DNA of 64,000 nt from IMGVR_UViG_3300046660_000488:372001-436000, one strand, 5' to 3'; shown: positions 9,643 through 61,073, numbered from the stretch's first letter. A program made the numbers and translations. The notes: a model not told the origin generated them from the sequence alone.

Positions 9643-10548
9643 GTGATCAACCCGCAGGAAGTCGAAGCGATATTGATGGACAGTCTGAGCCCGACCGGGG
9701 TTCTGGTCCAAGGCGTGATGCGGACGTTCGGCATCGACCTCGACAAGCTGGAGAAGCACCGCCAGACCTACAAGGACTGGATCGCGCAGCTTCCCACTGA
9801 ATTCCTGTCGGAGAAAGAAGGCGGCGGGGGCGGCTACTCGATGCTGAACCTCTGCGTCACCAAGGACGGCGAACTATGGACCGGTATGCAGTCCACCACG
9901 GACCTGCTGTTCGTCGGCGCCGCCGCTCTGGGCTTGGCCACCTATCTGATGCCGCGCGAAATGTGGCGGATGCTTCCGGGCTCGATGCCCTACATGGTCT
10001 TCACCACGGAAGACCCGAACCCCGACTCCATCGAACGCAAGTACATGATGCACCGGATGCTTCCGGACGGCGGCAAGGTTCGCCTGTGCATCGACGCCAA
10101 GGCGCCGCCGACGAAGGAAGAATTGGATGTCGCCTTCACCTACGTCCTGTCGGCGCTGTCACCATACGCCAATTGGACGTTGCAGGTGATGGAGGCCAAA
10201 GACCCGCTGGACGGCCGCGATGCGACTGTCATGAAGGTCTACACGCCCGATAACGCCAGCGACCTGATGCAGTACAAGCTGGGCGACGGTGACCAACCGG
10301 CCGAAATCCTGACGGTCGGAACGCGGGAAGAGATCGCCAAGGTCCCGCAGAAAATGATCATGTTGCAACAGACCGGCGTCGAAGATGGTCCGCGCGTCCA
10401 GAAGAGCCGCTACGACAGCCTGTTCGTGACCCTGATGTACGGCGACGGGGCGCGCCAGCGTCTGCACGGCGAAATGGGTGACCTGACGGTCTACCTGCCG
10501 GTCAAGAAGACGGTCCAAGCTCCGGAAGTCCAGCCTGAAGCTTCTTGA
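9643..10548 (+). CDS. two-domain hypothetical protein
   Basis: GGAG RBS and GTG start; GGGYSMLNLCVTKDGELWTG motif. Confidence 0.7.
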   Translation: MINPQEVEAILMDSLSPTGVLVQGVMRTFGIDLDKLEKHRQTYKDWIAQLPTEFLSEKEGGGGGYSMLNLCVTKDGELWTGMQSTTDLLFVGAAALGLATYLMPREMWRMLPGSMPYMVFTTEDPNPDSIERKYMMHRMLPDGGKVRLCIDAKAPPTKEELDVAFTYVLSALSPYANWTLQVMEAKDPLDGRDATVMKVYTPDNASDLMQYKLGDGDQPAEILTVGTREEIAKVPQKMIMLQQTGVEDGPRVQKSRYDSLFVTLMYGDGARQRLHGEMGDLTVYLPVKKTVQAPEVQPEAS

Positions 10549-10741
10549 CGTGCTCGTAGACCTCGTCGAGGTTCTTCTGCGCGCCGAGAACTTGCCGCTC
10601 TAGGGCGGCAAGCTCGAATTTCAGCAGGTCGTTGACACCCCGCACCTTGGCCATGTTGACCTTCAGTTCGGCGTTCTCCTTCTCGGAGGCGTCGAGCCTC
10701 GCCTGAAGGCGAGTCAGCGGGGTGTCGAGTTTGTGGGTCAT
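10502..10741 (-). CDS. coiled-coil hypothetical protein
   Basis: Operon position and heptad pattern. Confidence 0.6.
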   Translation of the reverse strand: MTHKLDTPLTRLQARLDASEKENAELKVNMAKVRGVNDLLKFELAALERQVLGAQKNLDEVYEHVKKLQAGLPELGPSS

Positions 10742-10747
10742 TGACCG

Positions 10748-11065
10748 TTACCCATGGTAATCGTCCATGTCGTCCACGAACTCGCCGCACTCTTCGTCGA
10801 AAACAGGATCGTCGTCATCGTCAAGCAACTCCGTCGCCTGATCGGCCATCAGGTTGGCGTTGTGCTCGTCCACCAGCTTGGTGGCGAACGATACCGCGTC
10901 ATCCAGCGTCAGGAAGGCGTCCGACGCCACGCGGAAGACGATCTGCGACGGAACACCGTCGAGGGCGTCTACGCGGGCCACGGGGACGTAAAAGCGGCCG
11001 TCTTCTCGGGTGACCGGATTGCCGACCGTCAGGAATTCCAGCACGAAAGCTTCGTCCAGCATCAC
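10748..11065 (-). CDS. hypothetical protein with an acidic tail
   Basis: Coupled to the upstream ORF. Confidence 0.65.
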   Translation of the reverse strand: MMLDEAFVLEFLTVGNPVTREDGRFYVPVARVDALDGVPSQIVFRVASDAFLTLDDAVSFATKLVDEHNANLMADQATELLDDDDDPVFDEECGEFVDDMDDYHG

Positions 11066-11508
11066 GCCACCGCCTTCTTGTTCTTCGAGCCCGGCGGGCG
11101 ACCACGGCGACGCGGCGCCATCGGCGTGCCGTCTTCGTTCAGCATCGGCTCAGGGACCTTCTTCTTGACGCCTGTGCCCGGCTTGCGGCCACGGCGCTTG
11201 CCCTGCGGCACGGCCTCGCCGAACGTGTCCATGCCGTAGATCGAGCCGATGGTTTGCAGGGTCATGCCGTCGATCTTGCGGACCTGATCGCCCATGATCA
11301 CGCGCGGCGAACCGTCGATGGTCGAGATCGTATCGAACTGAACCCGACCGGCCTTCTCGTAGACCTTCAGGCCGACGAGCGTAAAGGTCCCGACGCCACG
11401 CGCCAGCGGCGCGCCCGACAGGTCCACGCCCTTGTAGACGGCCTCGATTTCGGTGTTCTTGTGGATGATGCCGGTCTCAGTGAGCTTCCGAATGAGTGCA
11501 ATGTTCAC
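11062..11508 (-). CDS. AT-hook-containing DNA-binding protein
   Basis: KRRGRKP and RRRGRPPGSKNK. Confidence 0.7.
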   Translation of the reverse strand: MNIALIRKLTETGIIHKNTEIEAVYKGVDLSGAPLARGVGTFTLVGLKVYEKAGRVQFDTISTIDGSPRVIMGDQVRKIDGMTLQTIGSIYGMDTFGEAVPQGKRRGRKPGTGVKKKVPEPMLNEDGTPMAPRRRGRPPGSKNKKAVA

Positions 11509-12167
11509 GAAACAATCTCTTCTCGAAGAATGGATTTTGAAATGGAGGTAATCAAATCGTTGACACCCATCATGGCGACCATGATGTCGGTCTCAGAGTT
11601 CAAAAATAGGTTTGGGGAGTCGTCTCCAGTGAGCCAGCAAGTATCGGTGTTGTTCCGGCTCAGGAGGTAGACGTCGAACCAGTCATAAAATTCTGACCAG
11701 TCCTCTGGCGTAAAGGATCGTTTGAATTCGATCTTGTAGCGATACTTGCTCCAATAGAGCATGTCGGTGATTTCAGTCTTGATCTTACTCTTGCGGGACT
11801 TCTTGAGATAGTCGATCTCCGCTAGAGATTGCGGTCGGCTCACCTGCCGAACGTGCTTGAGATTGGAGGCGACGAACCGCTTTGCGGTCTCCGCGTCCAC
11901 GAAGAAAAAGCTGTAGCTGTGCTTGGTATTGTCGCGGACCTTCCAGTCGGAAGGCTCGCCGCTCAGGGTTTCAGTGCGGCGTTTCAGGAACCGCTTCTTG
12001 GCCTTGTCGAACGCCGCGCGCAGTACGTATGCGTCAGGCGGTGCCATGCCATCGCAGTTAGGGGGAACGACGCCGTGGTTCACGGTCACTCTGAACGGGT
12101 ACTTCCCCCAGAACAGATTCGTGATGGGCGTATAGTTCACCCCACGGTGAACGTCAAACGAGTCCAT
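11505..12167 (-). CDS. hypothetical protein
   Basis: Coupled ORF with LFWGKYPF and LYWSKYRY internal repeats. Confidence 0.7.
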   Translation of the reverse strand: MDSFDVHRGVNYTPITNLFWGKYPFRVTVNHGVVPPNCDGMAPPDAYVLRAAFDKAKKRFLKRRTETLSGEPSDWKVRDNTKHSYSFFFVDAETAKRFVASNLKHVRQVSRPQSLAEIDYLKKSRKSKIKTEITDMLYWSKYRYKIEFKRSFTPEDWSEFYDWFDVYLLSRNNTDTCWLTGDDSPNLFLNSETDIMVAMMGVNDLITSISKSILREEIVS

Positions 12168-12275
12168 AAAATGCGCTCAAGTATAAGTAGAACAATACAC
12201 AAGTCTCTGCTCCTGAAATTACGAGCAGAGGGCACTGGGGTTGCTGGACGAAAATTTCCCAGCAACCCCTATACT

Positions 12276-14555
12276 TTACACGTTGATAACCACGTTGTCA
12301 TCAACAATCGCGATGTTCGCATCGCCGCCGTTTTCCAGAGAACCGATCACGATCAACTTGGAAAGAGGCTTGGCGACATTGTCGGACAGGACGCGCTTGA
12401 GCGGTCGAGCGCCCATGAGCGGGTCGTAGCCCTTGTCGCCCAGCCAGTCCAAGGCCTCTTGCGTGAACGACAGATTGACGTTTCGCAGGGAGGCCATTTC
12501 CTGAAGCTGGCGAACGAACTTGGCCACGATGTGCAGCATGTTCGCCTTGTCCAGCCTGTCGAAGCGGATGTGGGCGTCCAGACGGTTCATGAACTCCGGG
12601 GTGAAGAACGCCTTGATCGCGGCGGTATCGCCGCCGACGTTCTCTTGCGATCCGAAACCGATCCGGTTCTTGGCCCGATCACGCGCCCCGGCATTCGAGG
12701 TCATGATCAGATGGATGTACCGGCAGTCGATGGTCTTGTTCGACGAGTCGGTGAACGAACCATTGTCCATGATCTGGAGGAAGATGTTCAGGACGTCCGG
12801 GTGAGCTTTCTCGATCTCATCCAGCAGCACCACGCAATGAGGCGTGTCGCTGACGCTCTGGGACAGCAGGCCAGCCTGATCCGAGTAGCCGACATAGCCG
12901 GGAGGGGCGCCGATCAGCCTGCTGACCGTGTGCTTCTCCATGTACTCGGACATGTCGATCCGGATGAGAGGCAGGTTGTAGACGTCCGCGAAGACCTTGG
13001 TGACTTCGGTCTTACCCACGCCGGTCGGGCCGGTGAACAGGTAGGCTCCAGCCGTCTTGTGGTTCTCACGCAGGCCAGCCTTGCTCAGGTAGATCGCGTC
13101 GATCAGGGCGGTGATCGCCGCTTCCTGCCCGAAGACGTTGGCGCGCATCTGCTCGTCGAGACGGATGATGCGTTCCTTGTCGCCCTCGGCCATTTTCTTC
13201 GGCGGGATTTTGGCGATCTGCTCAACTTCGGCCTCGATCTCTTCGACCGTGATCAGACCCTTGCGCTCGACACCTTCCTTCAGGACGTTCTGGGACGCGC
13301 CAGCGCAGTCGATCAGGTCGATGGCCTTGTCGGGCAGGAGCTTGCCGCTGATGTAACGGTGCGACAGGTCAACGGCCGCCACGAGGGCTTCGTCCGTGAA
13401 TTCGACGTTGTGGAAGGTCGAGTAATAGGGCGCGAGGCCGCGCAGGATGTCCTTGGCGTCGTCCAGCGACGGTTCGAACACATCCACCTTGCCGAATCGG
13501 CGAACGAGTGCCGTGTCCTTCTCGAAGTGCTTGTGGAACTCTGACGACGTCGTCGAGCCCATGCAGCGCAGCGTGCCCTTGGCCAGAGCAGGCTTCAGGA
13601 GGTTGGCCGCGTCCATCGTGCCGCTGTTGCCAGCCCCGGCGCCCATGATCATATGGATTTCGTCGATGAACAGGATCGACTTGGGCTTCAGTTCAAGGGC
13701 GTTGATGACTTGCTTCATCCGCTCTTCGAAATCACCGCGATAGCGAGCGCCAGCCACCAGAGCGGCCAGATCAAGCGCATAGACGGTCGAGTCCAGCAGG
13801 ATGGCCGGAACCTCGGAGCGAACGATCTTCAGGGCCAGACCTTCGGCGATGGCCGTCTTGCCAACACCCGGTTCACCCACCAGCAGCGGGTTGTTCTTCG
13901 TCCGGCGGGCGAGGATTTTGACGACGGAGTCCACTTCCTTCGTCCGGCCGATCAGCGGGTCGATGCTCTTGGTGTTGGCCCGCTCATTCAGGTTGACCGT
14001 GTAAAGCGCCAGAATGGAGTCGGCATCAGCTTCGGTCGTCGGCTTGGGCGGCGCCGTGGTCGGCTCGTCACCAGACATGATATGGCGTGCAAGACCGATG
14101 GTCGGCTTCTTGCCGTGCGACATGAAGCGCATCAGGGCCAGCGGATCGACGCCGAACTTTTGCAGGATCACGACCGCGTAACTGTCCTCCATCTTGGAGC
14201 CAGCCAGTTGCAGCAGGACATCCAGAGGGGTGACGTCAGGATCGGTGTGGGCGGCCTTCTTGCCGGTCGCGTTGAACACCAGTTCATTGGCGCGCGGGCT
14301 CGGCTCCGGCTCTTCGTCGCTGGCAGGAATGAGGCCTTCGGAGTAGAACGACTCCAACTCTTCCTGAATGCCCTCGACGTCGATCTTCATCCCTTCAAGG
14401 GCGGAGACCACATCTTCCTGCTCCAGAAGCGACGACAGCAGGTGTTCGAGGGTGATGAAAGCATGTCTGCGTTCGGTGGCGATTCGTCTAGCCCGAAGAA
14501 ACATCGCGGCTGTACGCTCAGTTTGAGCGCTATTCTCAGGCAAATCACTCATCAA
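12276..14555 (-). CDS. clpA: ATP-dependent Clp protease ATP-binding subunit ClpA
   Basis: Two AAA+ modules ([16 protein letters not shown]), [12 protein letters not shown], an IGF ClpP-docking loop and no ClpB middle domain. Confidence 0.95.
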
Positions 14556-14562
14556 AAATACC

Positions 14563-15057
14563 TTATCTACGCAATGTCTTACCTCCCGATCCTTTGGCCC
14601 TCGATAATACGAGGCGGGAGACGAGAGACACGAACGTCACCCCGTTCAGGTGGTCCGTCTCATGAAGGTAGCAGCGTGCGTCGAGATTGGCAAACATTTC
14701 GTTTACCAAATTTCCGGCCGCGTCCTGATAGCGCACCTCGGCGGTGATCGGCCGGGATACCTTCAGGAAAAGGCCGGGGAAGCTCAGGCAACCCTCATCA
14801 TCCTTGGCCTTGGTCTCGGAGACCGACAGGATTTCCGGGTTGAAGACGCCGATCTGGCGGCCGTCGCTCGTCTCCATGACGAACATGCGGTAGGGCAGGT
14901 TGACTTGCGGAGCGGCCAGACCGATGCCGCGCTCGCGCTTCATCGTAGACAGCATTTCGCCCACCAACCATTTCGGGTCGGCGGGCGGATTTTCGAAGTC
15001 GAAGGGAGGGGTGGGCTCCGACAGGATGGGGTGTGAATCGGGTACGAGGGTGAACAT
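14563..15057 (-). CDS. def: peptide deformylase
   Basis: GIGLAAPQV, EGCLSFP, HETDHLNG. Confidence 0.96.
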   Translation of the reverse strand: MFTLVPDSHPILSEPTPPFDFENPPADPKWLVGEMLSTMKRERGIGLAAPQVNLPYRMFVMETSDGRQIGVFNPEILSVSETKAKDDEGCLSFPGLFLKVSRPITAEVRYQDAAGNLVNEMFANLDARCYLHETDHLNGVTFVSLVSRLVLSRAKGSGGKTLRR

Positions 15058-15683
15058 TACAGTCTGGAGCGGATGATCTCGTGCATGACTTCGATCCCAG
15101 CGACCTTCAGGTCGTTGCAGGCTTTGGCGTCGCCCATCGAGACGATGTCGCGAAGCGAGGCGTGGATCAAGTAGGTTTCGGTGAACATCAGGCCGCGAAC
15201 CTGCGAAGCCCGCTCGTAGGAGATCATCCCCGGCGCCGTGCCCTCGCGGACAGTGATGTTGTGGCCAAGGCGGCTCATTTCGATGCCGAAGTCGCGGTTG
15301 GCCTTGATGCAGGCCTCTTGGTTGACCGGCGCGCCACGGTTCACAGCGCCACGACCCAGTTCACCGGCCTTGATCCTGTTGGAGACGTTGGCACACAATT
15401 GGGTCACGCAGCGGCTGTTGACGGCCGAGCCGACGATCTGAGCCATCTGGCTGAGGTCTTGAACGTTGGGGTCGAGGCCCTGATAGGTCGGCGAGACATA
15501 GCGCGTCTGGCCGTTGGCCATGCGCTGCTGATATTGATACTGCGGATACGGACGATCCTGCTGGCGGGTCTGCGGGCCATTGACGGCCGCCACCGCGTCG
15601 CGGGTCACGCTTGGATCGAACTGCTGGGCGTTCGCGCTCGAAGCGAACAGGACAGCGGCGATAGCAAGACCGGCGAGACGCAA
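15057..15683 (-). CDS. secreted/periplasmic hypothetical protein
   Basis: Signal peptide MRLAGLAIAAVLFASSANA; GGAGG RBS. Confidence 0.7.
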   Translation of the reverse strand: MRLAGLAIAAVLFASSANAQQFDPSVTRDAVAAVNGPQTRQQDRPYPQYQYQQRMANGQTRYVSPTYQGLDPNVQDLSQMAQIVGSAVNSRCVTQLCANVSNRIKAGELGRGAVNRGAPVNQEACIKANRDFGIEMSRLGHNITVREGTAPGMISYERASQVRGLMFTETYLIHASLRDIVSMGDAKACNDLKVAGIEVMHEIIRSRL

Positions 15684-15711
15684 GGTGACCTCCAGAGCAA
15701 TTTCGATTTGG

Positions 15712-16596
15712 CTACGTAGCAGAGTTTTGCTTCTCTTGCAAGTCTTTTACTTGCAAAAGCAGGCCTTTTTGCTCGTCCGTCAAGTCCTTGGGGACCGTGA
15801 TGTTGATGACCGCAAAGAGATCACCACGCTCACCACCGCGCTCAAGGTCCGGCAGACCGTAGCCGCTGATCCTCACCGACGACCCTGACACCTTGGTCGG
15901 AACGCCGAAATAAAGCTCTTCGCCCTCCAGCGTCACGATCTTGGCCGCGCCGCTGATCATCAGTTCAAGGGCATCCACGTCAACGCGGGCATGCAGGTTC
16001 GCGCCGTTGCGCTCGAACGCACGATGCGGCTTGACCCTTACCGTCAGGTAAAGGTCTCCAGCCTTGCCGCTCACCCAGTTCCCCATGCCCGGAACACGCA
16101 GCCGCGTACCGTGGTGAATGCCCGGTGGGATTTTCACGTTCAGGGTCTTGGCCGTTTCGAGGCCGGGATCGACCTCGATGTTCACGTTGGCCCCATTCAG
16201 TACCGAAATCAGGTCGATATCGACGGCGGCTTGCCGGTCCATCATCTGGCGACGGATGTGTTCGTCTTGGCGCCTGAAAATTTCCCGATAGCGATCCGCG
16301 AACGGGTTGTTGTCGTCGAACGCGAATTCCTGCCACCAGCCGCCCGCCGCGTCGGCGTTGCGGAAACCGTTCGGGCCATGCGGGTTCTGGCTGAAAGGGC
16401 TCGACGCCTGCTTCCACTCATTGCGCTTGGCCTGCGTGGCGATTTTCTCGTAAGCGGCTGAAATCTCTTTGAAACGAGCGTCGTCACCCCCGTTGCGATC
16501 CGGGTGATGTTCCTTGGCCAGCTTGCGGTAGGCCGACTTGATCTCGTCGTCGGTGGCGGTCTCTGCGACGCCAAGGGTGGTGAAGGGATTGCTCAT
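15712..16596 (-). CDS. dnaJ: DnaJ/CbpA-type J-domain chaperone without a Zn finger
   Basis: J-domain with HPD and a DnaJ C-terminal domain (GDLYL, GDLFA). Confidence 0.9.
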   Translation of the reverse strand: MSNPFTTLGVAETATDDEIKSAYRKLAKEHHPDRNGGDDARFKEISAAYEKIATQAKRNEWKQASSPFSQNPHGPNGFRNADAAGGWWQEFAFDDNNPFADRYREIFRRQDEHIRRQMMDRQAAVDIDLISVLNGANVNIEVDPGLETAKTLNVKIPPGIHHGTRLRVPGMGNWVSGKAGDLYLTVRVKPHRAFERNGANLHARVDVDALELMISGAAKIVTLEGEELYFGVPTKVSGSSVRISGYGLPDLERGGERGDLFAVINITVPKDLTDEQKGLLLQVKDLQEKQNSAT

Positions 16597-16672
16597 TAAC
16601 GAAATTATAACCCAATGGTAAGCCTAAAGCAGTAAAATCCAGCTTTAAGGCCAAGTATTTAGGGCCATCCCA

Positions 16673-21440: not shown

Positions 21441-21500
21441 GAATTCAGTCCCAACTGTCCTTGGAGTCATAAATAACCAGAATATTTGGGGAGTTATACA

Positions 21501-23423
21501 ATGCCTTCAGTTGGTAGCAGCCGCGTCAAGACGTCCGGCCGTGGTGAGATCGAGTACTCGCAGGATTCTGCAACAAGCAATGGCGCGACGACCGCTGCTG
21601 TTTCGACCCCTGTTGATGAGCCGATCCTGTCGGTTGTCGGCGAGAACGTCGGTGGTGGCCTTGGCCTCTTCAACGGCGTCAACGGCTCCGACCATGTGGT
21701 CATGGAGTTCAAGACCCTCAAGGCAGGCGCGGGCATCGCGATTGTCAACGACGGTCTGTCCCTGACCATCCGCGCCACCGGCAATGCGACCGGCAACGGC
21801 GGCACGATCATCGGCGACGGCTTCGACATCCAGCTTGGCGACATCGCCAACAAGGGTGACGGCTCGTGGGCGCCGGGCGCCGTGGACCTGACGGACTCGA
21901 CCCCGATGTCCGAAGCCATCGACGAGATCAACGAACTGCTCGGCCTGTTGATCCCCGCAGCCCCGCCCGCTTTCCCCAACGGCACGCTGACGATCATCAA
22001 CACCGCTGGCAACTCGCCGCGTCTGGCCGCTGGCTTCACCAGCCACGTCACGGGTCAGGGCACGCCGGTCGCGGGCGATGCTGTCGCGCGCATCACGACC
22101 ACGGGCGTCAGCACCAACACCCTCAACGACGTCGGCCCGGCTAACCGTGGCAAGATTCAGCTTCTGCTGAACGACGGTTTCGTCGGCGAGCGCACGCTGA
22201 CGGAGAACAGCGACAACGGCAACTACGGCGGCCTGATCATTTCCGACGAGAAGGACTTCCCGGTCGATAAGCCCGGTTTCTGGAAGTCGCTCGACGTTGC
22301 TGGCACGGCCGTCCCGGTCGCCCAAGGCCTCAACAAGGTCCGCATCAACCACACCAACGCTGGCACGACGGCCAACACGCTGTTCGTCCGCGACGACATG
22401 ACGGCTTCGCCGTCCATCCCGACTGGCTCGGTTGCTCTCCAGACGCTGGGTACAGTCGCCTATTCGTCGGGCATCCCGCACTTCGGCCAAGGCGGCGTCC
22501 TGACGGTTGGCGGCTCGATCACCAATCTGGCTGGCCAGACCTACTACGGCGGCAACGATCCGCTGACGATCACCGGCACGAACACGGTCACGACGGCTCA
22601 AGCCTTCAGCTACACTTCGCTCGGCATCACCACCCCGATCCCGGCACAGACGACGTCTGCGACCGCGACGACCGGCGTGGCTGTCAGCATCGACGGCACG
22701 ACCCATTCGTCGGGCGTCATCCAAGCCGTGGCCAAGAACGTCAACGGACAAACGGCTCCGACGACGCTGTCGCAGTCGATCATTCTGGTCAAGCGCGGCG
22801 TCGCCGCCTCGAACCGTCTGGACGAACTGAACGTCCCGGTCATCAATCTGGGCACGGTCCCCAACGCCAATTACGCCACGCGCACTCTGATCGCCGCCAA
22901 CGCCGACCGTCCGGCTGGCGCTACGGCCAACTGGGACGCCACGGCGGCTCTGGCCAGCTACGAAGCCGCAGTCTGGGCTGGCGCTCTGGGTCACTGCCAA
23001 GTCGATTTCACCAGCGGTTACCTGCCGCAGGGTCCGAATTACTCGCAGGGCCGCAGCGGCGCTCAGTACGCGACCTTCACGTTCAACCGCGCCTCGGTCT
23101 CCAATTTCCGCATCAACGTCGTCGGCACGTACGCAGGAGTTTGGGTGAAGCTTCCGGGCGTCTCCGACAACTCGGCGATCTCTCCGAACGCCACGAACGG
23201 CTGGTGGGACGCCACCAAGGCTTACGCCGGTGCTGGTGTCCCCGGCAACTCGTCGGACTCGCTGGCTGGCTGCGTCGTCGGCACGCCGATGGGCGGAACT
23301 TCCGGCGCCTATCAGATCACTTTTGGTCCTCAGTCTTCGACGAACGCGACCTCGAACCAGATCATTGTCCGTATTCGTCTGAACGCTGGGCAAGTCATTA
23401 CTTCGCTCAATTTCTCTAACTAA
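21501..23423 (+). CDS. virion fibre/appendage-associated protein A
   Basis: Late motif at 21470; Gly/Thr/Asn-rich; paralogue of 41334-43148. Confidence 0.7.
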   Translation: MPSVGSSRVKTSGRGEIEYSQDSATSNGATTAAVSTPVDEPILSVVGENVGGGLGLFNGVNGSDHVVMEFKTLKAGAGIAIVNDGLSLTIRATGNATGNGGTIIGDGFDIQLGDIANKGDGSWAPGAVDLTDSTPMSEAIDEINELLGLLIPAAPPAFPNGTLTIINTAGNSPRLAAGFTSHVTGQGTPVAGDAVARITTTGVSTNTLNDVGPANRGKIQLLLNDGFVGERTLTENSDNGNYGGLIISDEKDFPVDKPGFWKSLDVAGTAVPVAQGLNKVRINHTNAGTTANTLFVRDDMTASPSIPTGSVALQTLGTVAYSSGIPHFGQGGVLTVGGSITNLAGQTYYGGNDPLTITGTNTVTTAQAFSYTSLGITTPIPAQTTSATATTGVAVSIDGTTHSSGVIQAVAKNVNGQTAPTTLSQSIILVKRGVAASNRLDELNVPVINLGTVPNANYATRTLIAANADRPAGATANWDATAALASYEAAVWAGALGHCQVDFTSGYLPQGPNYSQGRSGAQYATFTFNRASVSNFRINVVGTYAGVWVKLPGVSDNSAISPNATNGWWDATKAYAGAGVPGNSSDSLAGCVVGTPMGGTSGAYQITFGPQSSTNATSNQIIVRIRLNAGQVITSLNFSN

Positions 23424-23435
23424 GGGTAATACTTC

Positions 23436-26400
23436 ATGGCCATTTCAGATTCTGACAAGATTGATTTCCTCTGGAAGAAGGTTATCTTTGGTGTTACCAA
23501 GACGGCGTCGGGCACCATCAAGCTCGGCTCGAACGAAAGCGTCACGTCGCCGTTCCCCGTCGATCCGGATAACATCTGGAGCGAAGCCAGCCTGATTCCG
23601 GACACGCCGCCGACTTCGACGACCGCTCAGGTCCGTCGTTATTTCGGTGTGACCCGCGTTCACATGACGGTGGACCCGACCTCGCCGCCTAACCAGACTT
23701 GGTTCGCGACGTCGGCCTATCCGGACATCACCAGCCGCCTGACGGATTTCATCAATCCGGGCATCTTCGGCGCTGGCTATCTGGTTCAAGCCTTCATCGG
23801 CGACCCGAACACGGGTCCGGCCGCTCGTATCTTCCCTGACGCTGCTGGCGAAGAATTCGTCTTCGACTATGCGGCCGGTGTCCTGAACTTCGTCAATGCT
23901 GTCCCGGCATCGCGCGCGGCGACCGTTGGCCAAGGCACGGTCTCGGTTTCTGGCAACGGCATCTACATCCAAGCCTACCGTTACGTCGGCGCCAAGGGCG
24001 GCGGCGGTTCGGGTGGTGGCTCGGGCTTCGTCGCCAAGGCTGGCGACACCATGACCGGAACGCTGGCGTTCAACGGCATCGACGACGCTCTCTTCCTGAA
24101 GGAAGACGCTGCGAACGGCACGCAATGGGGTGCTGGCGTGGTTGGCACGGACCTGCGCGTCTTCGCCGCCGACATCGCTAACTCGGCCATCAGCTTTGGT
24201 CACCGCGCCGCCAACACCGGCGTCTTCCGCGAAGACCTCCGCATCGACGCAAACGGCGTTGTGACGGTCGGTGGAGCCGACGACGGCTTCGTCACGACCA
24301 ACGACGGCAACCGCATCGTTCTGGGCCACGTGGATGCCAACGGCTTCGTCACTGAGAACATGGTCATCGAGGCCAACGGCGTCGTCTACATCGACGGCTA
24401 CATGGTCTACCACGAAGGCAACCTGAACCTGAACGGTGGCCTGACCCCGTCTGGTGTGTCGCCGGGCGCCTACACCAACGCCAACATCACGGTTGACGTC
24501 TACGGCCGCGTCACAGTCGCCGCCAACGGCACGGGCGGTGGTGGTTCCTCGGGCACGGTCACGTCGGTTGCGGCAACGGGATCGGCTGACATCGCCGTCA
24601 CTGGTTCGCCGATCACCACGGCTGGTACGCTTGCCTTCGCTCTGTCCAACACGGCGGTCACACCGGGCACGTATACGAAGGTCACGGTTGACGCCAAGGG
24701 CCGCGCCACGGCTGGCACGAACCTGAGCAGCAGCGACGTCACCACGGCGCTGGGCTTCACTCCGCTCCAGACGGTCACCAACGCAGCCGTCGTCTCGGCG
24801 CTCGGCTATCAGCCGCTGGCGACCAACCAGACGATCACGGTCACGGGCGACGCTACGGGCTCGGGCGCTACTTCGATTGCCCTGACCCTCGCCAACACCG
24901 GCGTCGCTGCTTCGACCTACTCGCTCCCCACGGTCACCGTGGACAGCAAGGGGCGCGTCATCAACATCCAGAACGGCTCGGCTGTCACCAGCGTGGGCGT
25001 CACCGGTTCGGCCGACATCACGGCGACCGGCGGACCGATCACGTCGGCTGGCTCGATCTCTCTGGCCCTGTCCGACAAGCTGGGTGTAACGCCGGGCACG
25101 TACAGCCTGACCACGATCACCGTTGACCAGAAGGGCCGCATCACTGCGATCTCGAACGGTTCGGCCGGTGGTACTGGCACGGTCACGTCGGTCGGCCTGA
25201 CCGGCTCCCCGGCCATCACGGTCACGGGCTCGACGATCACCACGAGCGGTTCGTTCGCGGTCGATCTGTCGAACACGGGCGTCACGGCCCAGACCTACAC
25301 CAATCCCGTCGTCACGGTCGATGTGAAGGGTCGCGTCACTGCGATTTCGAACGGCTCGGCTGGCGGCACGGGAACTGTCACCTCGGTTGGAGCCACGGGT
25401 TCGGCCGACATCACCGTGGGTGGTGGTCCGATCACCAACTCGGGCACGCTGACCTTTGCTCTGTCGAACACGACGGTTTCGCCGGGCGTCTTCACCAAGG
25501 TCACGGTCGATGCCAAGGGCCGCGTAACGACGGGCGCGTTTCTGTCGAGCGCCGACGTCACCACGGCGCTGGGCTTCACACCGATCTCGACCAACCAGTC
25601 GATCACCGTCTCTGGTGACGCCACCGGTTCGGGCACAACGGCGATCACTCTGGCTCTGGCCAACACGGGCGTAACGGCTCAAACCTACGTCAACCCGACC
25701 ATCACGGTCGATGCCAAGGGCCGTGTCCTGACCGCTTCGAACGGAACGGGTTCGGCTGGCACGGTCACGTCGGTTGCTGCTACCGGCACGGCTGACATCA
25801 CGGTCACCGGTTCGCCGATCACGACGACCGGAACTTTGGCTTTCGCGCTGTCCAACACGGCGGTCACGCCGGGCACGTACACGAAGGTCACCGTGGACGC
25901 CAAGGGTCGCGCGACTGCTGGCGCCCAACTGACCAACACCGACGTCACCACGGCTCTGGGCTTCACTCCGCTGTCCACCGTCACCAACGCGGCCGTCGTC
26001 TCGGCTCTGGGCTATCAACCGCTCCAGCACAACGAAGCGATCACGGCTTCGGGAGACGTCACGGGTTCGGGTACGACGGCGATTGCACTGACGCTGGCCA
26101 ACTCGGGTGTCACGGCTGGATCGTACACCAACGCCAACATCACGGTTGACGCCAAAGGCCGCGTGACTGCGGTCGCCAACGGCGTGGCTGGTGGTGGCGG
26201 CGGTGGTTCGGTTTCGGTCAGCAAGGGTGGCACGCAAGTCGTAGCCACGGCCACCAACCTCAACTTCACGGGTAACAGCGTGACGGTGACGGACGGCGGC
26301 GCTGGCGTGGCCAACATCGCAGTCGATGACCGCGTCGAGTACGTCTACTTCCAATACACCTCGGGCAACGGCGGCACGTTCGCGAACAACACCGATTGCA

Positions 26401-26720
26401 TTCTGGCCAAGACCAGCGGCGTCACGGTCACCATCCTCGACGGAACCAACTCCATCGTGAAGTTCACCTTCACGGGTCGTCCGTTCCCGCCGGGTGGTAT
26501 TGCCGTCATGGGTCAAGCGTATTCGACCAACGAGTTCCTGTACAAGAACGTCGATGGCACGTTCGCTACCAGCAAGATCACCGGCGGCGGCACGGCGGCT
26601 GCTCCGACGTTCTTCGGTACGTTCTCCGAATACACGATCCAGCTTCGCATGACCGACACCGGCACTTCGGGCGCTGGTCTGGGCCAACGCGCGCGCGCTG
26701 CAATCATCTTCAAGTTCTAA
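23436..26720 (+). CDS. long tail-fibre-like protein B with repeated TVDAKGRVT modules
   Basis: KAGDTMTG motif and many GTYTKVTVDAKGR fibre repeats. Confidence 0.8.
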   Translation: MAISDSDKIDFLWKKVIFGVTKTASGTIKLGSNESVTSPFPVDPDNIWSEASLIPDTPPTSTTAQVRRYFGVTRVHMTVDPTSPPNQTWFATSAYPDITSRLTDFINPGIFGAGYLVQAFIGDPNTGPAARIFPDAAGEEFVFDYAAGVLNFVNAVPASRAATVGQGTVSVSGNGIYIQAYRYVGAKGGGGSGGGSGFVAKAGDTMTGTLAFNGIDDALFLKEDAANGTQWGAGVVGTDLRVFAADIANSAISFGHRAANTGVFREDLRIDANGVVTVGGADDGFVTTNDGNRIVLGHVDANGFVTENMVIEANGVVYIDGYMVYHEGNLNLNGGLTPSGVSPGAYTNANITVDVYGRVTVAANGTGGGGSSGTVTSVAATGSADIAVTGSPITTAGTLAFALSNTAVTPGTYTKVTVDAKGRATAGTNLSSSDVTTALGFTPLQTVTNAAVVSALGYQPLATNQTITVTGDATGSGATSIALTLANTGVAASTYSLPTVTVDSKGRVINIQNGSAVTSVGVTGSADITATGGPITSAGSISLALSDKLGVTPGTYSLTTITVDQKGRITAISNGSAGGTGTVTSVGLTGSPAITVTGSTITTSGSFAVDLSNTGVTAQTYTNPVVTVDVKGRVTAISNGSAGGTGTVTSVGATGSADITVGGGPITNSGTLTFALSNTTVSPGVFTKVTVDAKGRVTTGAFLSSADVTTALGFTPISTNQSITVSGDATGSGTTAITLALANTGVTAQTYVNPTITVDAKGRVLTASNGTGSAGTVTSVAATGTADITVTGSPITTTGTLAFALSNTAVTPGTYTKVTVDAKGRATAGAQLTNTDVTTALGFTPLSTVTNAAVVSALGYQPLQHNEAITASGDVTGSGTTAIALTLANSGVTAGSYTNANITVDAKGRVTAVANGVAGGGGGGSVSVSKGGTQVVATATNLNFTGNSVTVTDGGAGVANIAVDDRVEYVYFQYTSGNGGTFANNTDCILAKTSGVTVTILDGTNSIVKFTFTGRPFPPGGIAVMGQAYSTNEFLYKNVDGTFATSKITGGGTAAAPTFFGTFSEYTIQLRMTDTGTSGAGLGQRARAAIIFKF
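24440..26190 (+). repeat. imperfect tandem repeats encoding fibre modules
   Basis: Recurring GTVTSVAATG.ADITVTG.PITT.GTL.FALSNT.VTPG.YTKVTVDAKGR units. Confidence 0.85.
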
Positions 26721-36945: not shown

Positions 36946-36975
36946 GATGACGGTATTTAGTGCCGACTTTATTCT

Positions 36976-40238: not shown

Positions 40239-41318
40239 TTAGGCGTAGGTGATGACCACGTTGGCCGTACCGACCGTCGCCGCGCCGGTGACGTAGATCG
40301 CGATGTCCGTTTCAGCACCCGTGGGGAACTGGTAGATCGGAGTCGTGACATACGAACCAGCGCCTTGCAGGTCGTTTTGGTCCGCGCCCATCAGGCGGGC
40401 GTTGTCGCCAGCGTCACCGACGCTGATGGCGATGTCGCCGTCGAAATCGGCCGTGACTTCAACCGAAACCTCAACCACGCGAGCGCCGTTGCCGACCTTG
40501 CCCAGAGAGATCGTGCCGGTCGAAGCAGCGGTGATGGCCACCTTGGTCGTCAGGTTGTCGGAACGAGCCGAATCCTGAGTGGCGACCAGACGCCAAGCCG
40601 TGCCGTCGTACAGGTAGTCAGCGTATTCGCCAGCCGCAGCGTCGGTCGGGATGCCGCTCGCGTCGATGACGTGAACGAAATCGCCAGCACCCGGCGTGAG
40701 GCTATCGCGAGCCGCGATATCGGCGACGACCGAAGACTTGGTCGCCGAAGCACCCTTGGCGCCGATGTACTTGTAGACTTCGATGTAGACGCCGTTCGAG
40801 GCGACGGAGAACGTGCCCGTACCGATGGTCGCAGCCTTACCGCTCGGGATCGTGCCCGTGAAGTTCAGAACGCCAGAGATATAGTCGTAGACGTACTCTT
40901 CGCCAGTCGTGTCGGGGAAGATACGAGCAGCGTTGCCGCTGTTCGGGTCGCCCAGATAGACCTTGACGAGATAGCCGGAACCGAACGTCGTCGGAACGAA
41001 GTCGATCAGGCGCGAGCCCGTGTCGTTGTAGGTCGCCGTGGCCAGCCACGTCTGGTTGGACGGGGCGGTCGGGTCCATCGTCATACGGATGCGCGAGGCG
41101 CCCGTGTACAGTTGGATCGTGGCCGTGGTCGAAACAGGCGGCAGGGTAGGGATCGCAGTCGAATCCGATTGTGCCCAGATGTTCGCCGAATAGACCGGCG
41201 TGGGCGAAGCAATCGTTTCGTTCGAACCAGCCTTGTTAGCGGCCGATGCTGTCTTCGAAGTACCGAAGATTACCTTCTTCCAAAGGAAGTCAAGCTTTTC
41301 GCTGTCAGAAATTGCCAT
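40239..41318 (-). CDS. virion protein B' (N-terminus of B plus C-terminus of C)
   Basis: MAISDSEKLDFLWKKVIFG as in 23436; VVADIAARD...RLMGADQNDL as in 26730. Confidence 0.75.
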   Translation of the reverse strand: MAISDSEKLDFLWKKVIFGTSKTASAANKAGSNETIASPTPVYSANIWAQSDSTAIPTLPPVSTTATIQLYTGASRIRMTMDPTAPSNQTWLATATYNDTGSRLIDFVPTTFGSGYLVKVYLGDPNSGNAARIFPDTTGEEYVYDYISGVLNFTGTIPSGKAATIGTGTFSVASNGVYIEVYKYIGAKGASATKSSVVADIAARDSLTPGAGDFVHVIDASGIPTDAAAGEYADYLYDGTAWRLVATQDSARSDNLTTKVAITAASTGTISLGKVGNGARVVEVSVEVTADFDGDIAISVGDAGDNARLMGADQNDLQGAGSYVTTPIYQFPTGAETDIAIYVTGAATVGTANVVITYA

Positions 41319-41333
41319 GATGCTTATCCTTCC

Positions 41334-43148
41334 TTAGTTGCTGAAGCTGAGTGCGGTGATGGCTTGGCCAGCGTTCAGGCGGAAGCGCACGAGGATTTCA
41401 TTCCCCGTTGCCGACGTCGAAGAAGCCGTACCGAAGGTCATTTGGAACGAGCCAGTGGCGCCGCTCATGACCGTACCCGACGCACAGCCAGCGACGGTGT
41501 CGCCAGCTTCACCGGGGATACCGGCGCCGTCATAGGGTGCGAAACCGTTCCACCAAACGCCGCCCAGCGAGTTCGGCTGAGCCGTCGAAACGCCCGGAAG
41601 AGCGATCCAGCAGCCAGCGTACGTGCCGGTGACGTTGATCTTGAACTGCGAGAGAGCCGTACGGGCGAACGAGAACGTCACGTACTGGACTGCATCGCGG
41701 CCCGAGAGGTTCGGACCAACCGGCAGATAACCGGTCGAGTAGTTGGTTTGGTCAGCCTTCAGGATACCGCCGACGACAGCCGCTTCGTGAGCAGCCAGCG
41801 CAGCCGTAGCGTCCCAAGCGACAGTCGAGGCGTTCGGGGTGTTGCCCGTGCCCTTGCTGACGCGGATGGCGTTGTTCGCGTTCGGCGAAGAGCCCAGACC
41901 CGAGACCGGGATGGACAGTTCGTCAACCTTCGAAGCAGCCGCGACGCCGCGCTTGACCAGAACGATGTTGCTGGTCAGGTTCGTTGCCGTGCTGGAGCCG
42001 TTGACGTTTTTGGCGACGGCCGTGAGAGCGCCCATGCCATGCGTCGCGCCGTCCACGTTGATCGTCACCGGCGTGATGGCCGTGGCGGTCGTGGTGTTGG
42101 CGGCGAACGGGGTCGAGAGACCCATGTTCGTGTAGGTGAAGGTCTGCGACGAGATCACCGAGTTGGCGCCCGAGACGACGACCGGGTCAGAACCACCGTA
42201 GTAGGTTTGGCCCGACAGGTTCGACATCGACAGACCAACAGTCAGCGTGCCCGACGTGTTGTAGTGCGGAACCGACGACGAGTAGGCGACCGTACCGGCA
42301 CTGGCCTGAGCCAGCGACGTTGCGGTGATCGCCGGAACGGCCGTGACGTTGTCGCGAACGAGGAAGACATCCGAAGTCGTGCCCGAACCGGTGTGGTTCA
42401 GCTTGATCTTGTTGATGCCGGTGCTCGTGGCGCCGCCAGTGATCTGGATGTCAACCGACTTCCAGAAACCCGGCGTAGCGACCGGGAAGTCTTTCTGATC
42501 GGAAATGACCAGACCCGAGAACGTGCCAGCGTCGCCCGTACCCGTGAGGGTCTTGGAGCCGACGACAGTGCCGTTCAGCAGGAATTGGACCGTGCCCGAA
42601 TTGCCCGGACCCATGTCGTTGAAGACGTTCGAGTTGACGGCAGCGATAGTGCGGGTGACCGCGCTACCAGCCGACAGGCCCGAGCCACCGCCCGAAGCGT
42701 CAGCAGCACCGGTGGCGAGCAGCGGAGTGCTACCCGAGGTGTTGGCGACGGTCAGAGCGTTCGCGTTCGGGAACGACGGCGGCGATGCCGGGACCAGAAG
42801 GCCCAGAATTTCGTTCAGACGGTCAACTGCTTCCGAGACCGGAGTCGCGTCAGACAGTGAGACGGCGCCCGGCGTCCACGAGCCATCGCCATTGACGGCG
42901 ACGTTGCCCAGCGGGACGTGGAAACCGTCGTTAGCAGCAACCGCGTTGGACACGAAGGTCGTAACTTGACCCAGTGTGACAACGTCGGTGTCGCTTACGG
43001 CGTTAGCAGCACGCATAACGGCCAGACCTGCGTCTGCCGCGTTGCGAACTTCGACAACACCACCGTTCACTTTGAGGCGAGGACCCGCCTTACCAAACTG
43101 AACGTTGGTGCCTACGCCTGTAAGCCCAAAGTTTTTAATTTCAGCCAT
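41334..43148 (-). CDS. virion protein A' (N-terminus of D plus body of A)
   Basis: MAEIKNFGLTGVGTNVQFGK as in 28798; GDGSW.PGAV...RLNAGQ.IT.L.FSN as in 21501; late motif at 43176. Confidence 0.75.
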   Translation of the reverse strand: MAEIKNFGLTGVGTNVQFGKAGPRLKVNGGVVEVRNAADAGLAVMRAANAVSDTDVVTLGQVTTFVSNAVAANDGFHVPLGNVAVNGDGSWTPGAVSLSDATPVSEAVDRLNEILGLLVPASPPSFPNANALTVANTSGSTPLLATGAADASGGGSGLSAGSAVTRTIAAVNSNVFNDMGPGNSGTVQFLLNGTVVGSKTLTGTGDAGTFSGLVISDQKDFPVATPGFWKSVDIQITGGATSTGINKIKLNHTGSGTTSDVFLVRDNVTAVPAITATSLAQASAGTVAYSSSVPHYNTSGTLTVGLSMSNLSGQTYYGGSDPVVVSGANSVISSQTFTYTNMGLSTPFAANTTTATAITPVTINVDGATHGMGALTAVAKNVNGSSTATNLTSNIVLVKRGVAAASKVDELSIPVSGLGSSPNANNAIRVSKGTGNTPNASTVAWDATAALAAHEAAVVGGILKADQTNYSTGYLPVGPNLSGRDAVQYVTFSFARTALSQFKINVTGTYAGCWIALPGVSTAQPNSLGGVWWNGFAPYDGAGIPGEAGDTVAGCASGTVMSGATGSFQMTFGTASSTSATGNEILVRFRLNAGQAITALSFSN

Positions 43149-44695: not shown

Positions 44696-44730
44696 TCTGT
44701 ATTTAAGCATGGTTTACCAAATGGCACAAG

Positions 44731-61063: not shown

Positions 61064-61073
61064 ATAAGGGATC

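What the first reader, a model, noticed from the sequence alone, without database searches (positions are those of the whole stretch)
12276..16661. Late protein quality-control operon (dnaJ, secreted protein, def, clpA) complementing tmRNA and SerRS
Seen in sequence: four tightly packed genes follow a TAAATA motif at 16656-16661, and ClpA retains both ATPase modules and the IGF loop. Established: PDF removes N-formyl groups, J-proteins deliver substrates to DnaK, and ClpAP can degrade ssrA-tagged and N-degron substrates. Inference: with ssrA and serS, this forms a phage-run charging, rescue, maturation and degradation pipeline for very large virion proteins, or for selective removal of host proteins. 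No clpP or clpS is present in the window, so host ClpP may be co-opted.
Basis: partly seen in the sequence, partly recalled or inferred. Interest (0 to 1): 0.62.

Follow-up and report, generated by a model that had tools for sequence, protein, structure and literature searches.

The report
Huge-phage dnaJ–def–clpA proteostasis operon
A 578-kb soil phage carries a compact four-gene unit (J-protein co-chaperone, small exported protein, peptide deformylase, ClpA unfoldase) that is conserved in many huge phages and works beside the phage's own ClpP, ClpS and ClpX, so it is a real but already annotated kind of phage protein-handling module.

Summary
Four tightly packed minus-strand genes lie at 12276-16596: a J-protein, a signal-peptide protein, peptide deformylase and a ClpA-type unfoldase. 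A CTAAATA motif precedes them (16656-16662) and two strong hairpins follow them (12205-12269).

The window is part of a complete 578,292-bp phage genome with terminal repeats.

The interpretation needs three corrections.
- The phage does not have to borrow host ClpP. It encodes ClpP, ClpS and ClpX about 300 kb away, as do all 8 complete ClpA-bearing huge phages tested and Sinorhizobium phage Phosso.
- The proposed pipeline is incomplete. The genome has no SmpB, AlaRS, DnaK, MAP or L/F-transferase, and SerRS does not charge tmRNA.
- "Late" is plausible but unproven. TAAATA is the top upstream hexamer genome-wide and precedes sheath, portal and fibre genes, and a T4 gp55-like sigma factor is encoded. 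The motif also precedes RNR, rIIB and clpX, and no RNA data exist.

The order dnaJ-(def)-clpA is phage-specific: 50 of 56 non-redundant viral ClpA loci have dnaJ upstream, and no bacterial ClpA locus does. Phage ClpAs form one clade in which the ClpP-docking tripeptide is always kept.

Cultured relatives (Atu_ph07, AP-J-162, Phosso) already carry these annotations. This is a new member of a known kind, of moderate interest.

The parts
16655..16662 (-). Promoter-like motif CTAAATAC (core TAAATA at 16661-16656), 59 nt upstream of the dnaJ ATG, in a 135-nt divergent intergenic region
   Evidence: Read. CTAAATA occurs 12 times in the window against 0.78 expected. TAAATA is the top upstream hexamer genome-wide, 77 sense against 27 antisense in 362 upstream regions. 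A single copy lies 22-25 nt before the first gene of the homologous module in L190, L191 and Phosso.
15712..16596 (-). dnaJ-like gene, 294 aa: class B (CbpA-like) J-protein with a J domain carrying HPD and the DnaJ C-terminal substrate-binding domains, but no zinc finger
   Evidence: Pfam DnaJ 62.4 bits and DnaJ_C 106.7 bits. NCBIfam DnaJ_bact scores 175 against a cutoff of 377, and it resembles PRK14299 and CbpA models. It is the only J-protein in the genome, and the genome has no Hsp70.
15057..15683 (-). Exported protein, 208 aa, TTG start. Sec-type signal peptide (cleavage after ...SSANA, before QQ), then a low-complexity Q/Y-rich linker and a C-terminal helical bundle of about 120 aa with conserved cysteines. 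Function unknown.
   Evidence: No hit in Pfam, NCBIfam or PHROGs. About 20 relatives among 1.8 billion representatives. All carry an N-terminal hydrophobic segment, and C125 and C189 are invariant. AF2 gives pLDDT above 90 for residues 90-208, with no fold match. The gene lies between dnaJ and def in 3 of 3 relatives looked up.
14563..15057 (-). def, peptide deformylase, 164 aa. Its start overlaps the stop of the preceding gene (TAATG).
   Evidence: Pfam 131.7 bits; TIGR00079 scores 106.7 against a cutoff of 103.95. Motifs GIGLAAPQV, EGCLSFPG and HETDHLNG are intact. It is the only PDF in the genome.
12276..14552 (-). clpA-type double-ring AAA+ unfoldase, 758 aa from ATG 14552 (a TTG lies at 14555). 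It has an N-domain, D1 and D2 modules, an IGF ClpP-docking loop and no M-domain.
   Evidence: TIGR02639 847.5 bits. Aligns with E. coli ClpA at 686 bits over residues 24-750. phrog_4871 801 bits. It sits in a phage-only clade.
12205..12269 (-). Two GC-rich hairpins (11-bp stem at 12269-12237, 8-bp stem at 12230-12205) starting 7 nt after the clpA stop codon: a terminator-like 3' boundary
   Evidence: MFE -45.9 kcal/mol, z = -4.33, with 0 of 200 shuffles folding as well. Strong hairpins occupy the same position in L190, L010, L011 and Phosso, with z from -4.6 to -5.5.

Best explanation
This is a conserved transcription unit of a clade of huge, T4-related phages (Atu_ph07, Phosso, AP-J-162 and Rak2-like phages).

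Shown:
- It encodes a class B J-protein, an exported helical-bundle protein, an active-site-intact peptide deformylase and a ClpA unfoldase of a phage-specific lineage.
- It is bounded by a [C/A]TAAATA promoter-like motif and by terminator-like hairpins.
- The same genome encodes ClpP, ClpS and ClpX.

Inferred mechanism:
- ClpA hexamers dock through their IGF loops onto phage-encoded ClpP, and possibly onto mixed phage and host rings.
- Phage ClpS on the ClpA N-domain supplies N-degron substrates.
- The J-protein recruits host DnaK, since the phage has none.
- PDF raises deformylation capacity for the heavy load of phage translation.

Together these expand folding, N-terminal maturation and degradation capacity in the infected cell. 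The unit is probably read from a gp55-type (T4-late-like) promoter, so it would be expressed along with virion genes. The tmRNA 28 kb away adds a canonical alpha-proteobacterial tag ending in AVAA. The phage's own ClpXP, and secondarily ClpAP, could degrade such tagged proteins, but SmpB, AlaRS, MAP, DnaK and the L/F-transferase must come from the host.
For: - Gene identities and intact motifs.
- Complete virus record of 578,292 bp with terminal repeats.
- Phage ClpP: 290 bits against a subfamily cutoff of 249, only 78 bits against a cutoff of 120 for the head-maturation model, catalytic triad present.
- ClpS 81 bits. ClpX 553 bits against a cutoff of 359.
- Among 13 ClpA-bearing huge phages, ClpP is present in 12, ClpS in 11 and ClpX in 11. 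All 8 complete genomes and Phosso have all three.
- The [ILVM]GF docking tripeptide is kept in 57 of 57 phage ClpAs.
- ClpS with the ClpA N-domain: ipSAE 0.71 against 0.01 for the best control. That mark was reached by 51 of 78 solved complexes and by 2 of 108 mismatched pairs. The three runs agree in at least 90% of contacts, and partner pLDDT is 85. A like complex has been solved, so this shows likeness only.
- Synteny: 50 of 56 non-redundant viral ClpA loci have dnaJ upstream, 28 have def directly upstream, and 27 have both in the order dnaJ, def, clpA. The layout is the same in Phosso and in L190, L191 and a 171-kb contig.
- Bacterial ClpA loci have clpS upstream in 18 cases and never dnaJ or def.
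- Phage ClpAs form one clade with support 99.
- Promoter motif statistics. The motif lies 5 nt before the tmRNA 5' end. A gp55-like sigma factor scores 218 bits. The motif precedes sheath, portal, fibre and virion-protein genes.
- Literature: ATAAATA is predicted as a late promoter in the Rak2-like phages CBB and GAP32 (PMC5259590).
- Hairpins after clpA.
Against: - There is no expression data. The only run holding the region is a rhizosphere DNA metagenome.
- The motif also precedes RNR, rIIB, a cytidyltransferase/NUDIX gene and clpX, so it may mark middle plus late, or general, phage transcription.
- clpP and clpS lie about 300 kb away and have no TAAATA within 260 nt upstream. Co-expression with clpA is therefore not shown.
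- ClpA scores below NCBI's equivalog cutoff (847.5 against 993).
- ClpS differs from E. coli at two pocket positions, D36 to N and M40 to V.
- The hairpins lack a clean U-tract, so downstream genes may be reached by read-through.
- The role of the exported protein in a cytoplasmic module is unexplained.
- The tree is FastTree only, and the bacterial sampling came from a pattern scan.
Confidence: 0.6

Rival explanations
1. One reading: a self-contained, phage-run pipeline (SerRS and tmRNA charging and rescue, then PDF, DnaJ and ClpA) in which ClpA must co-opt host ClpP because the phage has none.
For: The window contains a two-piece alpha-type tmRNA and SerRS 28-30 kb from the operon, and has no clpP or clpS. 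The tmRNA tag ANDNVAMDYAVAA ends in a typical Clp degron.
Against: The genome encodes its own ClpP, ClpS and ClpX. It has no SmpB, no AlaRS, no MAP and no DnaK. By established knowledge SerRS does not charge tmRNA, and ssrA-tagged proteins go mainly to ClpXP. The tmRNA and SerRS are not in the same transcription unit.
Confidence: 0.12
2. ClpA and the J-protein act mainly as a ClpP-independent unfolding, remodelling or assembly chaperone pair for very large virion proteins, in the way DnaK/J-ClpB does, or as a translocase. Iyer et al. (PMC7824862) suggested this for jumbo-phage ClpA and ClpX.
For: dnaJ sits directly upstream of clpA in 50 of 56 phage lineages, at the position clpS holds in bacteria. 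The likely co-expressed genes are virion genes carrying the same motif. E. coli ClpA has known chaperone activity without ClpP (established knowledge).
Against: The ClpP-docking tripeptide is conserved in all 57 phage ClpAs. ClpP and ClpS co-occur with ClpA in every complete genome tested. There is no ClpB-type M-domain, which is the known DnaK-coupling element.
Confidence: 0.15
3. The module is a host-takeover device. ClpS, ClpA and ClpP are retargeted to destroy selected host proteins such as defence proteins, antitoxins and regulators, rather than to support phage protein quality control.
For: The phage ClpS has altered pocket residues (D36 to N, M40 to V against E. coli). Iyer et al. read patchy jumbo-phage ClpP and ClpS as anti-host. 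The phage ClpA lineage is old and distinct.
Against: No substrate evidence exists. Neither the L/F-transferase nor any other degron-making enzyme is encoded. Linkage to PDF and a J-protein, and a promoter shared with virion genes, fit biosynthetic support better. The two roles are not mutually exclusive.
Confidence: 0.13

Closest known systems
Agrobacterium phage Atu_ph07 (490 kb): ClpA gp292 and DnaJ gp293, plus ClpX gp2, ClpP gp676, ClpS gp708 (PMC6102473)
   Same: dnaJ and clpA are adjacent. The full Clp set is scattered over a huge T4-related genome with an alphaproteobacterial host. The paper states that ClpA is conserved in Rak2-like phages.
   Different: Atu_ph07 also has ClpB, which this phage lacks: only ClpA and ClpX carry AAA_2. 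The paper mentions no PDF. No exported protein, promoter or terminator is described for the unit.
Sinorhizobium phages Phosso (PV764938, 469 kb) and AP-J-162 (471.5 kb, PMC11242549)
   Same: In Phosso the order DnaJ-like, PDF, Clp ATPase lies on one strand, with a CTAAATA 22 nt before the first gene of the run and a strong hairpin after clpA. Phosso also has ClpP, ClpS and ClpX. AP-J-162 has PDF gp154 next to DnaJ gp155, six Clp ORFs and a tmRNA.
   Different: Phosso has no exported-protein gene between dnaJ and def, and two small genes precede dnaJ in its unit. DNA identity to the window is only about 66% over part of clpA.
Bacterial clpS-clpA operon and the ClpAPS N-degron protease (E. coli, Caulobacter)
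   Same: The domain architecture matches, with an end-to-end alignment to E. coli ClpA. The ClpP-docking loop, the pore loops and a ClpS predicted to bind the N-domain are all present.
   Different: In the phages dnaJ (and def) takes the place of clpS upstream of clpA, and clpS lies about 300 kb away. Phage ClpAs form a sister clade to the sampled bacterial ClpAs. The score is below the NCBIfam equivalog cutoff.
Phage-encoded peptide deformylases (cyanophage S-SSM7 PDF, PDB 3UWA; phrog_2890)
   Same: A small PDF with the three catalytic motifs, matching phrog_2890 at 129 bits and 3UWA at E 3e-15.
   Different: Here it is embedded in a chaperone and unfoldase unit rather than among photosystem-related genes. 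Substrate preference is unknown.
T4 late promoters (TATAAATA, gp55/gp33/gp45) and the ATAAATA motif of Rak2-like phages CBB and GAP32 (PMC5259590)
   Same: The core TAAATA has no -35 element, lies upstream of structural genes, and a gp55-like sigma factor is encoded.
   Different: The base before the core is C (56 of 109) or A (36 of 109), and T in only 3 sites. The motif also precedes non-structural genes. gp33 was not sought. Timing has not been measured.

Membership tests
ClpA (class I Hsp100 unfoldase partnering ClpP) | Two AAA+ modules, each with Walker A and B motifs and pore loops | tested here: met
   GEPGVGKT / LFIDEIH / RYRGDFE in D1 and GPTGVGKT / LLDEIEKAH / GYVGY in D2
ClpA (class I Hsp100 unfoldase partnering ClpP) | ClpP-docking IG[FL] loop in D2 | tested here: met
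   IGF aligns to the IGL of E. coli ClpA. [ILVM]GF is present in 57 of 57 phage homologues.
ClpA (class I Hsp100 unfoldase partnering ClpP) | Clp N-domain present and no ClpB/ClpC-type middle domain | tested here: met
   Clp_N 40.7 bits. 758 aa aligned collinearly to the 758-aa E. coli ClpA, while ClpB and ClpC match only in two separate pieces.
ClpA (class I Hsp100 unfoldase partnering ClpP) | Score above NCBIfam equivalog cutoff (TIGR02639, 993 bits) | tested here: inconclusive
   847.5 bits, below the cutoff although by far the best model. This fits a separate phage clade sister to bacterial ClpA.
ClpA (class I Hsp100 unfoldase partnering ClpP) | Physical and functional coupling to ClpP and ClpS | not testable with these tools
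   Only a prediction is available: ClpS with the N-domain gives ipSAE 0.71 against 0.01 for the best control. The mark was reached by 51 of 78 solved and 2 of 108 mismatched pairs. Biochemistry is needed.
Peptide deformylase (PDF) | Three metal-binding and catalytic motifs: GxGxAAxQ, EGCLS, HExxH | tested here: met
   GIGLAAPQ, EGCLS and HETDH read. Pfam 131.7 bits against a cutoff of 22.8, and TIGR00079 106.7 against 103.95.
J-domain protein, class A DnaJ (bacterial equivalog) | J domain, G/F region, zinc-finger domain and C-terminal domains | tested here: not met
   No zinc-finger domain hit. TIGR02349 scores 175.5 bits against a cutoff of 377 and matches in two pieces. It is therefore not filed as DnaJ proper.
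J-domain protein, class B (CbpA/DjlB-like) | J domain with HPD plus the DnaJ_C substrate-binding domains, without a zinc finger | tested here: met
   DnaJ 62.4 bits and DnaJ_C 106.7 bits. HPD is read in 'EHHPDRNG'. It gives full-length matches to PRK14299 and to the CbpA model PRK10266, both below their cutoffs.
Cellular-type ClpP (not a prohead protease) | Ser-His-Asp triad, full-length S14 fold, score above the ClpP cutoff and below the head-maturation cutoff | tested here: met
   NF001368 scores 289.8 against a cutoff of 249, while the head-maturation model scores 78 against 120. GQACSMG, IHDP and ERDNF align to the triad positions. Its neighbours are an RNA ligase and a DUF2201 metallopeptidase, not head genes.
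ClpS N-degron adaptor | ClpS fold and residues that bind the substrate alpha-amino group (E. coli N34, D35, D36, H66) | tested here: inconclusive
   Pfam 81 bits against a cutoff of 23. N, D and H are conserved, but D36 is N and the gatekeeper M40 is V.
T4-type late promoter / gp55 regulon | TAAATA-core -10-like element without a -35 element, placed upstream of virion genes | tested here: met
   The motif precedes sheath, portal, fibre and virion-protein genes.
T4-type late promoter / gp55 regulon | Phage-encoded gp55-like sigma factor | tested here: met
   phrog_12791 217.9 bits and phrog_234 76.2 bits at G000:C1:301389-302114
T4-type late promoter / gp55 regulon | Transcription late in infection and dependent on replication | not testable with these tools
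   No RNA run holds the sequence. The motif also precedes RNR, rIIB and clpX.
Operon (single transcription unit) | Co-directional genes with short gaps, one promoter and one terminator | tested here: met
   Gaps of 28, -1 and 10 nt. A single TAAATA lies upstream and hairpins lie downstream. The layout is conserved in relatives.
Operon (single transcription unit) | One mRNA covering all four genes | not testable with these tools
   No RNA data

The most novel reading that the evidence does not exclude
In this phage lineage the J-protein may have replaced ClpS as the operon-linked partner of ClpA. It would then act as a substrate-delivery adaptor, handing nascent or misfolded giant virion proteins, freshly deformylated by the co-encoded PDF, directly to ClpA. 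That would be a J-protein-ClpA bi-chaperone and protease axis not described in bacteria. The conserved exported helical-bundle protein would be a further, still unknown, component.
Probability: 0.1. Interest if true: 0.65.

Novelty: new member of a known kind. Interest (0 to 1): 0.38.

Why it matters
Huge phages carry much of their own translation and proteostasis machinery. This genome shows how complete that set can be: ClpA, ClpX, ClpP, ClpS, a J-protein, PDF, tmRNA and SerRS. It also shows exactly where the phage still depends on its host, namely for DnaK, SmpB, AlaRS and MAP.

The comparative result goes beyond the existing annotations. The order dnaJ-(def)-clpA is phage-specific and recurs across dozens of lineages, and it is tied to a monophyletic phage ClpA that always keeps its ClpP-docking loop. 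That gives a concrete, testable unit for asking why giant virions need extra unfolding and degradation capacity. Cultured relatives (Phosso, AP-J-162, Atu_ph07) make the experiments feasible.

Tried and rejected
- ARAGORN found no tRNA or tmRNA in the window. Rfam did find the two-piece tmRNA.
- The exported protein gave nothing in Pfam, NCBIfam or PHROGs. The word search found only itself. The ESM Atlas feature search gave no usable hit, with a best score of 0.77.
- Foldseek against the PDB and the Atlas shape search gave only generic helical-bundle noise, with E no better than 0.58 (all values 0.58 or higher) and TM at or below 0.3.
- The look-up of sequencing runs returned one DNA run, a rhizosphere metagenome that is probably the source sample, and no RNA. 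Read laying was therefore not used, because contigs cannot show timing or transcript ends.
- Paper searches for Phosso and for timing of the PA5oct ClpA homologue gave nothing usable.
- Contamination by bacterial DNA was considered and rejected. The record is a complete 578-kb virus contig with terminal repeats, it carries sheath, portal and fibre genes, and its ClpA lies in a phage-only clade.
- The idea that the phage ClpP is a prohead protease was rejected on model scores and gene neighbourhood.
- One fold call failed on a length limit and was repeated within the limit.
- No alternative genetic code was used.

Full report
**What the sequence is.** The window is bases 372,001-436,000 of a 578,292-bp IMG/VR virus record with direct terminal repeats, rated 100% complete. 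It has about 60% G+C.
- The window carries a tail sheath gene, tail-fibre-like genes, a DNA ligase, ThyX and SerRS.
- It also carries a two-piece alphaproteobacterial tmRNA.
- The only public run holding the region is a rhizosphere DNA metagenome.
- The nearest cultured relative by DNA is Sinorhizobium phage Phosso, 469 kb.

It is therefore a huge, T4-related phage of a probable alphaproteobacterial soil host.

| Gene | Window coordinates | Size | Main evidence |
|---|---|---|---|
| J-protein | 15712-16596 | 294 aa | J domain with HPD plus DnaJ_C, no zinc finger |
| Exported protein | 15057-15683 | 208 aa | TTG start behind GGAGG, Sec-type signal peptide |
| Peptide deformylase | 14563-15057 | 164 aa | All three catalytic motifs intact |
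| ClpA-type unfoldase | 12276-14552 | 758 aa | End-to-end alignment with E. coli ClpA |

- The gaps between the genes are 28 nt, a one-base TAATG overlap, and 10 nt.
- ClpA aligns with E. coli ClpA at 686 bits. It keeps both Walker A/B pairs and both pore loops, and has IGF where E. coli has the IGL ClpP-docking tripeptide.
- The TAAATA motif is at 16661-16656, 59 nt before the dnaJ ATG, in a divergent intergenic region.

**The motif is real.**
- CTAAATA occurs 12 times in the window against 0.78 expected, and no shuffle of 100 reaches that count.
- I made a crude codon-usage gene call of the whole genome: 620 genes.
- On that call TAAATA is the most enriched hexamer in upstream intergenic DNA. 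It occurs in 77 of 362 upstream regions in sense and 27 in antisense.
- 129 of its 180 genomic copies lie in the 20.5% of the genome called intergenic.
- The base before the core is C or A in 92 of 109 sites, and there is no -35 element.
- It precedes the tail sheath, portal, several fibre and baseplate-like genes and virion structural proteins.
- It also lies 5 nt before the 5' end of the tmRNA, which is the geometry expected of a -10-like element.
- The genome encodes a T4 gp55-like late sigma factor (218 bits to phrog_12791).
- An ATAAATA motif was already predicted as the late promoter of the Rak2-like phages CBB and GAP32 (PMC5259590).
- Against a strictly late reading, the motif also precedes the RNR large subunit, rIIB, a cytidyltransferase/NUDIX gene and clpX.

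Late timing is therefore probable, at roughly 55-60%, but not shown.

**Operon boundaries.**
- No second TAAATA lies inside the unit.
- Seven nucleotides after the clpA stop codon come two strong hairpins at 12269-12205 (z = -4.33).
- Strong hairpins occupy the same place in four relatives, although their sequences differ.
- In L190, L191 and Phosso a single CTAAATA lies 22-25 nt before the first gene of the homologous run.

Comparative evidence thus supports one promoter, one unit and one 3' boundary. Four further small genes downstream (10502-12167) are conserved in relatives and could be reached by read-through.

**The rest of the genome changes the interpretation.** The phage encodes three more Clp components:
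- A cellular-type ClpP at G000 77760-78353. It scores 290 bits against a cutoff of 249, has an intact Ser-His-Asp triad, and lies below the cutoff of the head-maturation model.
- ClpS at 82887-83186.
- ClpX at 87027-88289, at 553 bits against a cutoff of 359.

It lacks SmpB, Hsp70/DnaK, ClpB, AlaRS, L/F-transferase and MAP.
- The 'charging' link through SerRS does not hold either, because tmRNA is charged by AlaRS (established knowledge).
- The tmRNA tag reads ANDNVAMDYAVAA, a canonical alpha-type degron. The primary protease for such tags would be ClpXP, which the phage also supplies.

A predicted complex of phage ClpS with the ClpA N-domain passed its controls. The ipSAE was 0.71 against 0.01 for the best control. 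That mark was reached by 51 of 78 solved complexes and 2 of 108 mismatched pairs. The three runs agreed in at least 90% of contacts, and the partner's pLDDT was 85. Because the E. coli complex is solved, this shows likeness rather than binding.

**Comparative picture.** IMG/VR holds more than 585 ClpA relatives.
- Among 56 non-redundant loci taken from the best 80, 50 have a full-length dnaJ-type gene just upstream on the same strand. Of the 56, 28 have def directly upstream of clpA, and 27 have both, always in the order dnaJ, def, clpA.
- Bacterial ClpA loci have clpS upstream in 18 cases and never dnaJ or def.
- In a FastTree phylogeny the 57 phage ClpAs form one clade (support 99), sister to 28 bacterial ClpAs from several phyla.
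- Every one of those phage ClpAs keeps the [ILVM]GF tripeptide, which argues that ClpP docking is under selection.
- Of 13 ClpA-bearing huge phages, 12 have ClpP, 11 have ClpS and 11 have ClpX. That includes all 8 complete genomes and Phosso.

**The exported protein.** It has no family assignment.
- An exhaustive HMMER search found about 20 representatives.
- All of them have an N-terminal signal-like segment and conserved cysteines.
- In three of three contexts examined the gene sits between dnaJ and def.
- The C-terminal 120 residues fold confidently as a helical bundle with no informative structural match.

Its presence in an otherwise cytoplasmic module is unexplained.

**What is already known.**
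- The Atu_ph07 paper lists ClpA gp292 next to DnaJ gp293, plus ClpX, ClpP, ClpS and ClpB, and notes that ClpA is conserved in Rak2-like phages (PMC6102473).
- The AP-J-162 paper lists PDF gp154 next to DnaJ gp155, six Clp ORFs and a tmRNA (PMC11242549).
- Iyer et al. mention ClpA, ClpX, ClpP, ClpS and J-proteins in jumbo phages (PMC7824862).
- PHROGs already holds families for the ClpA, the PDF and the J-protein.

No paper I found treats dnaJ-def-clpA as a conserved unit. None reports the phage-only ClpA clade, the promoter and terminator framing, or the exported-protein family.

**Verdict.** This is a new member of a known kind, with some added comparative value.

Noticed in passing
whole genome G000; in the window e.g. 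36954-36960 (-) and 61060-61066 (+): The spacing between TAAATA and predicted start codons is bimodal. 38 of 109 sites end 0-9 nt (mostly 4-6 nt) before the start codon, and 34 end 20-39 nt before it. If transcription starts about 6 nt after the motif, as at the tmRNA gene, a large class of genes would give leaderless mRNAs. The starts come from a crude gene caller.
   Followed up: partly
window 44402-44738 (-): This is a two-piece (permuted) alphaproteobacterial tmRNA that ARAGORN missed and Rfam found. The tag reads ANDNVAMDYAVAA, and a TAAATA motif (44705-44700) lies 5 nt before its 5' end. SerRS is adjacent at 45189-46466. The genome has no SmpB or AlaRS.
   Followed up: partly
window 15057-15683 (-); relatives P0003-P0020: This small family of exported, cysteine-bearing helical-bundle proteins has about 20 representatives among 1.8 billion. 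In every context examined it sits between dnaJ and def of huge-phage modules. Its function is unknown.
   Followed up: yes
window 10502-12167 (-): Four small co-directional genes (220, 148, 105 and 79 aa) follow the hairpins after clpA. Two of their junctions overlap, and none has a family hit. The 220-aa protein has homologues just downstream of clpA in L010, L011 and L023. Similar small genes follow clpA in L190, so the unit may extend by read-through.
   Followed up: partly
G000:C1:301389-302114 (+), outside the window: This ORF is a T4 gp55-like late sigma factor: phrog_12791 at 218 bits and phrog_234 at 76 bits, in an open frame of 329 aa. gp33 and gp45 homologues were not sought.
   Followed up: partly
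G000:C1:78354-78520, upstream of clpP, outside the window: clpP and clpS have no TAAATA within 260 nt upstream. Instead clpP is preceded by a sigma-70-like pair, TCGACA, an 18-nt spacer, then TATACT (read). It may therefore be expressed earlier than clpA, or by host RNA polymerase.
   Followed up: no
G000:C1:82887-83186 (-), outside the window: Phage ClpS differs from E. coli ClpS at two substrate-pocket positions. D36 is N, and the gatekeeper M40 is V (alignment). This could alter N-degron specificity.
   Followed up: no
window 21486-26720 (+) and 40239-43148 (-): There are two inverted copies of a gene pair. The phrog_8578 proteins (645 and 604 aa) are each followed by a protein with the phrog_9417 N-terminal domain (1094 and 359 aa), the longer one with tail-fibre-like parts. 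They look like duplicated fibre cassettes, and each cassette has a TAAATA motif upstream.
   Followed up: no
whole genome, upstream regions: Other words recur upstream of genes: the palindromic pair ACTGTGCT/AGCACAGT, the pair TGGTAAAC/GTTTACCA, and TTGAC-containing words such as TGGTTGAC. They may be regulator sites or a second promoter class. They remain unexplained.
   Followed up: no
literature, relatives: ClpP was detected by mass spectrometry in virions of the Rak2-like phage CBB, with one peptide (PMC5259590). [quoted passage not shown] Clp components of huge phages may therefore be packaged.
   Followed up: no
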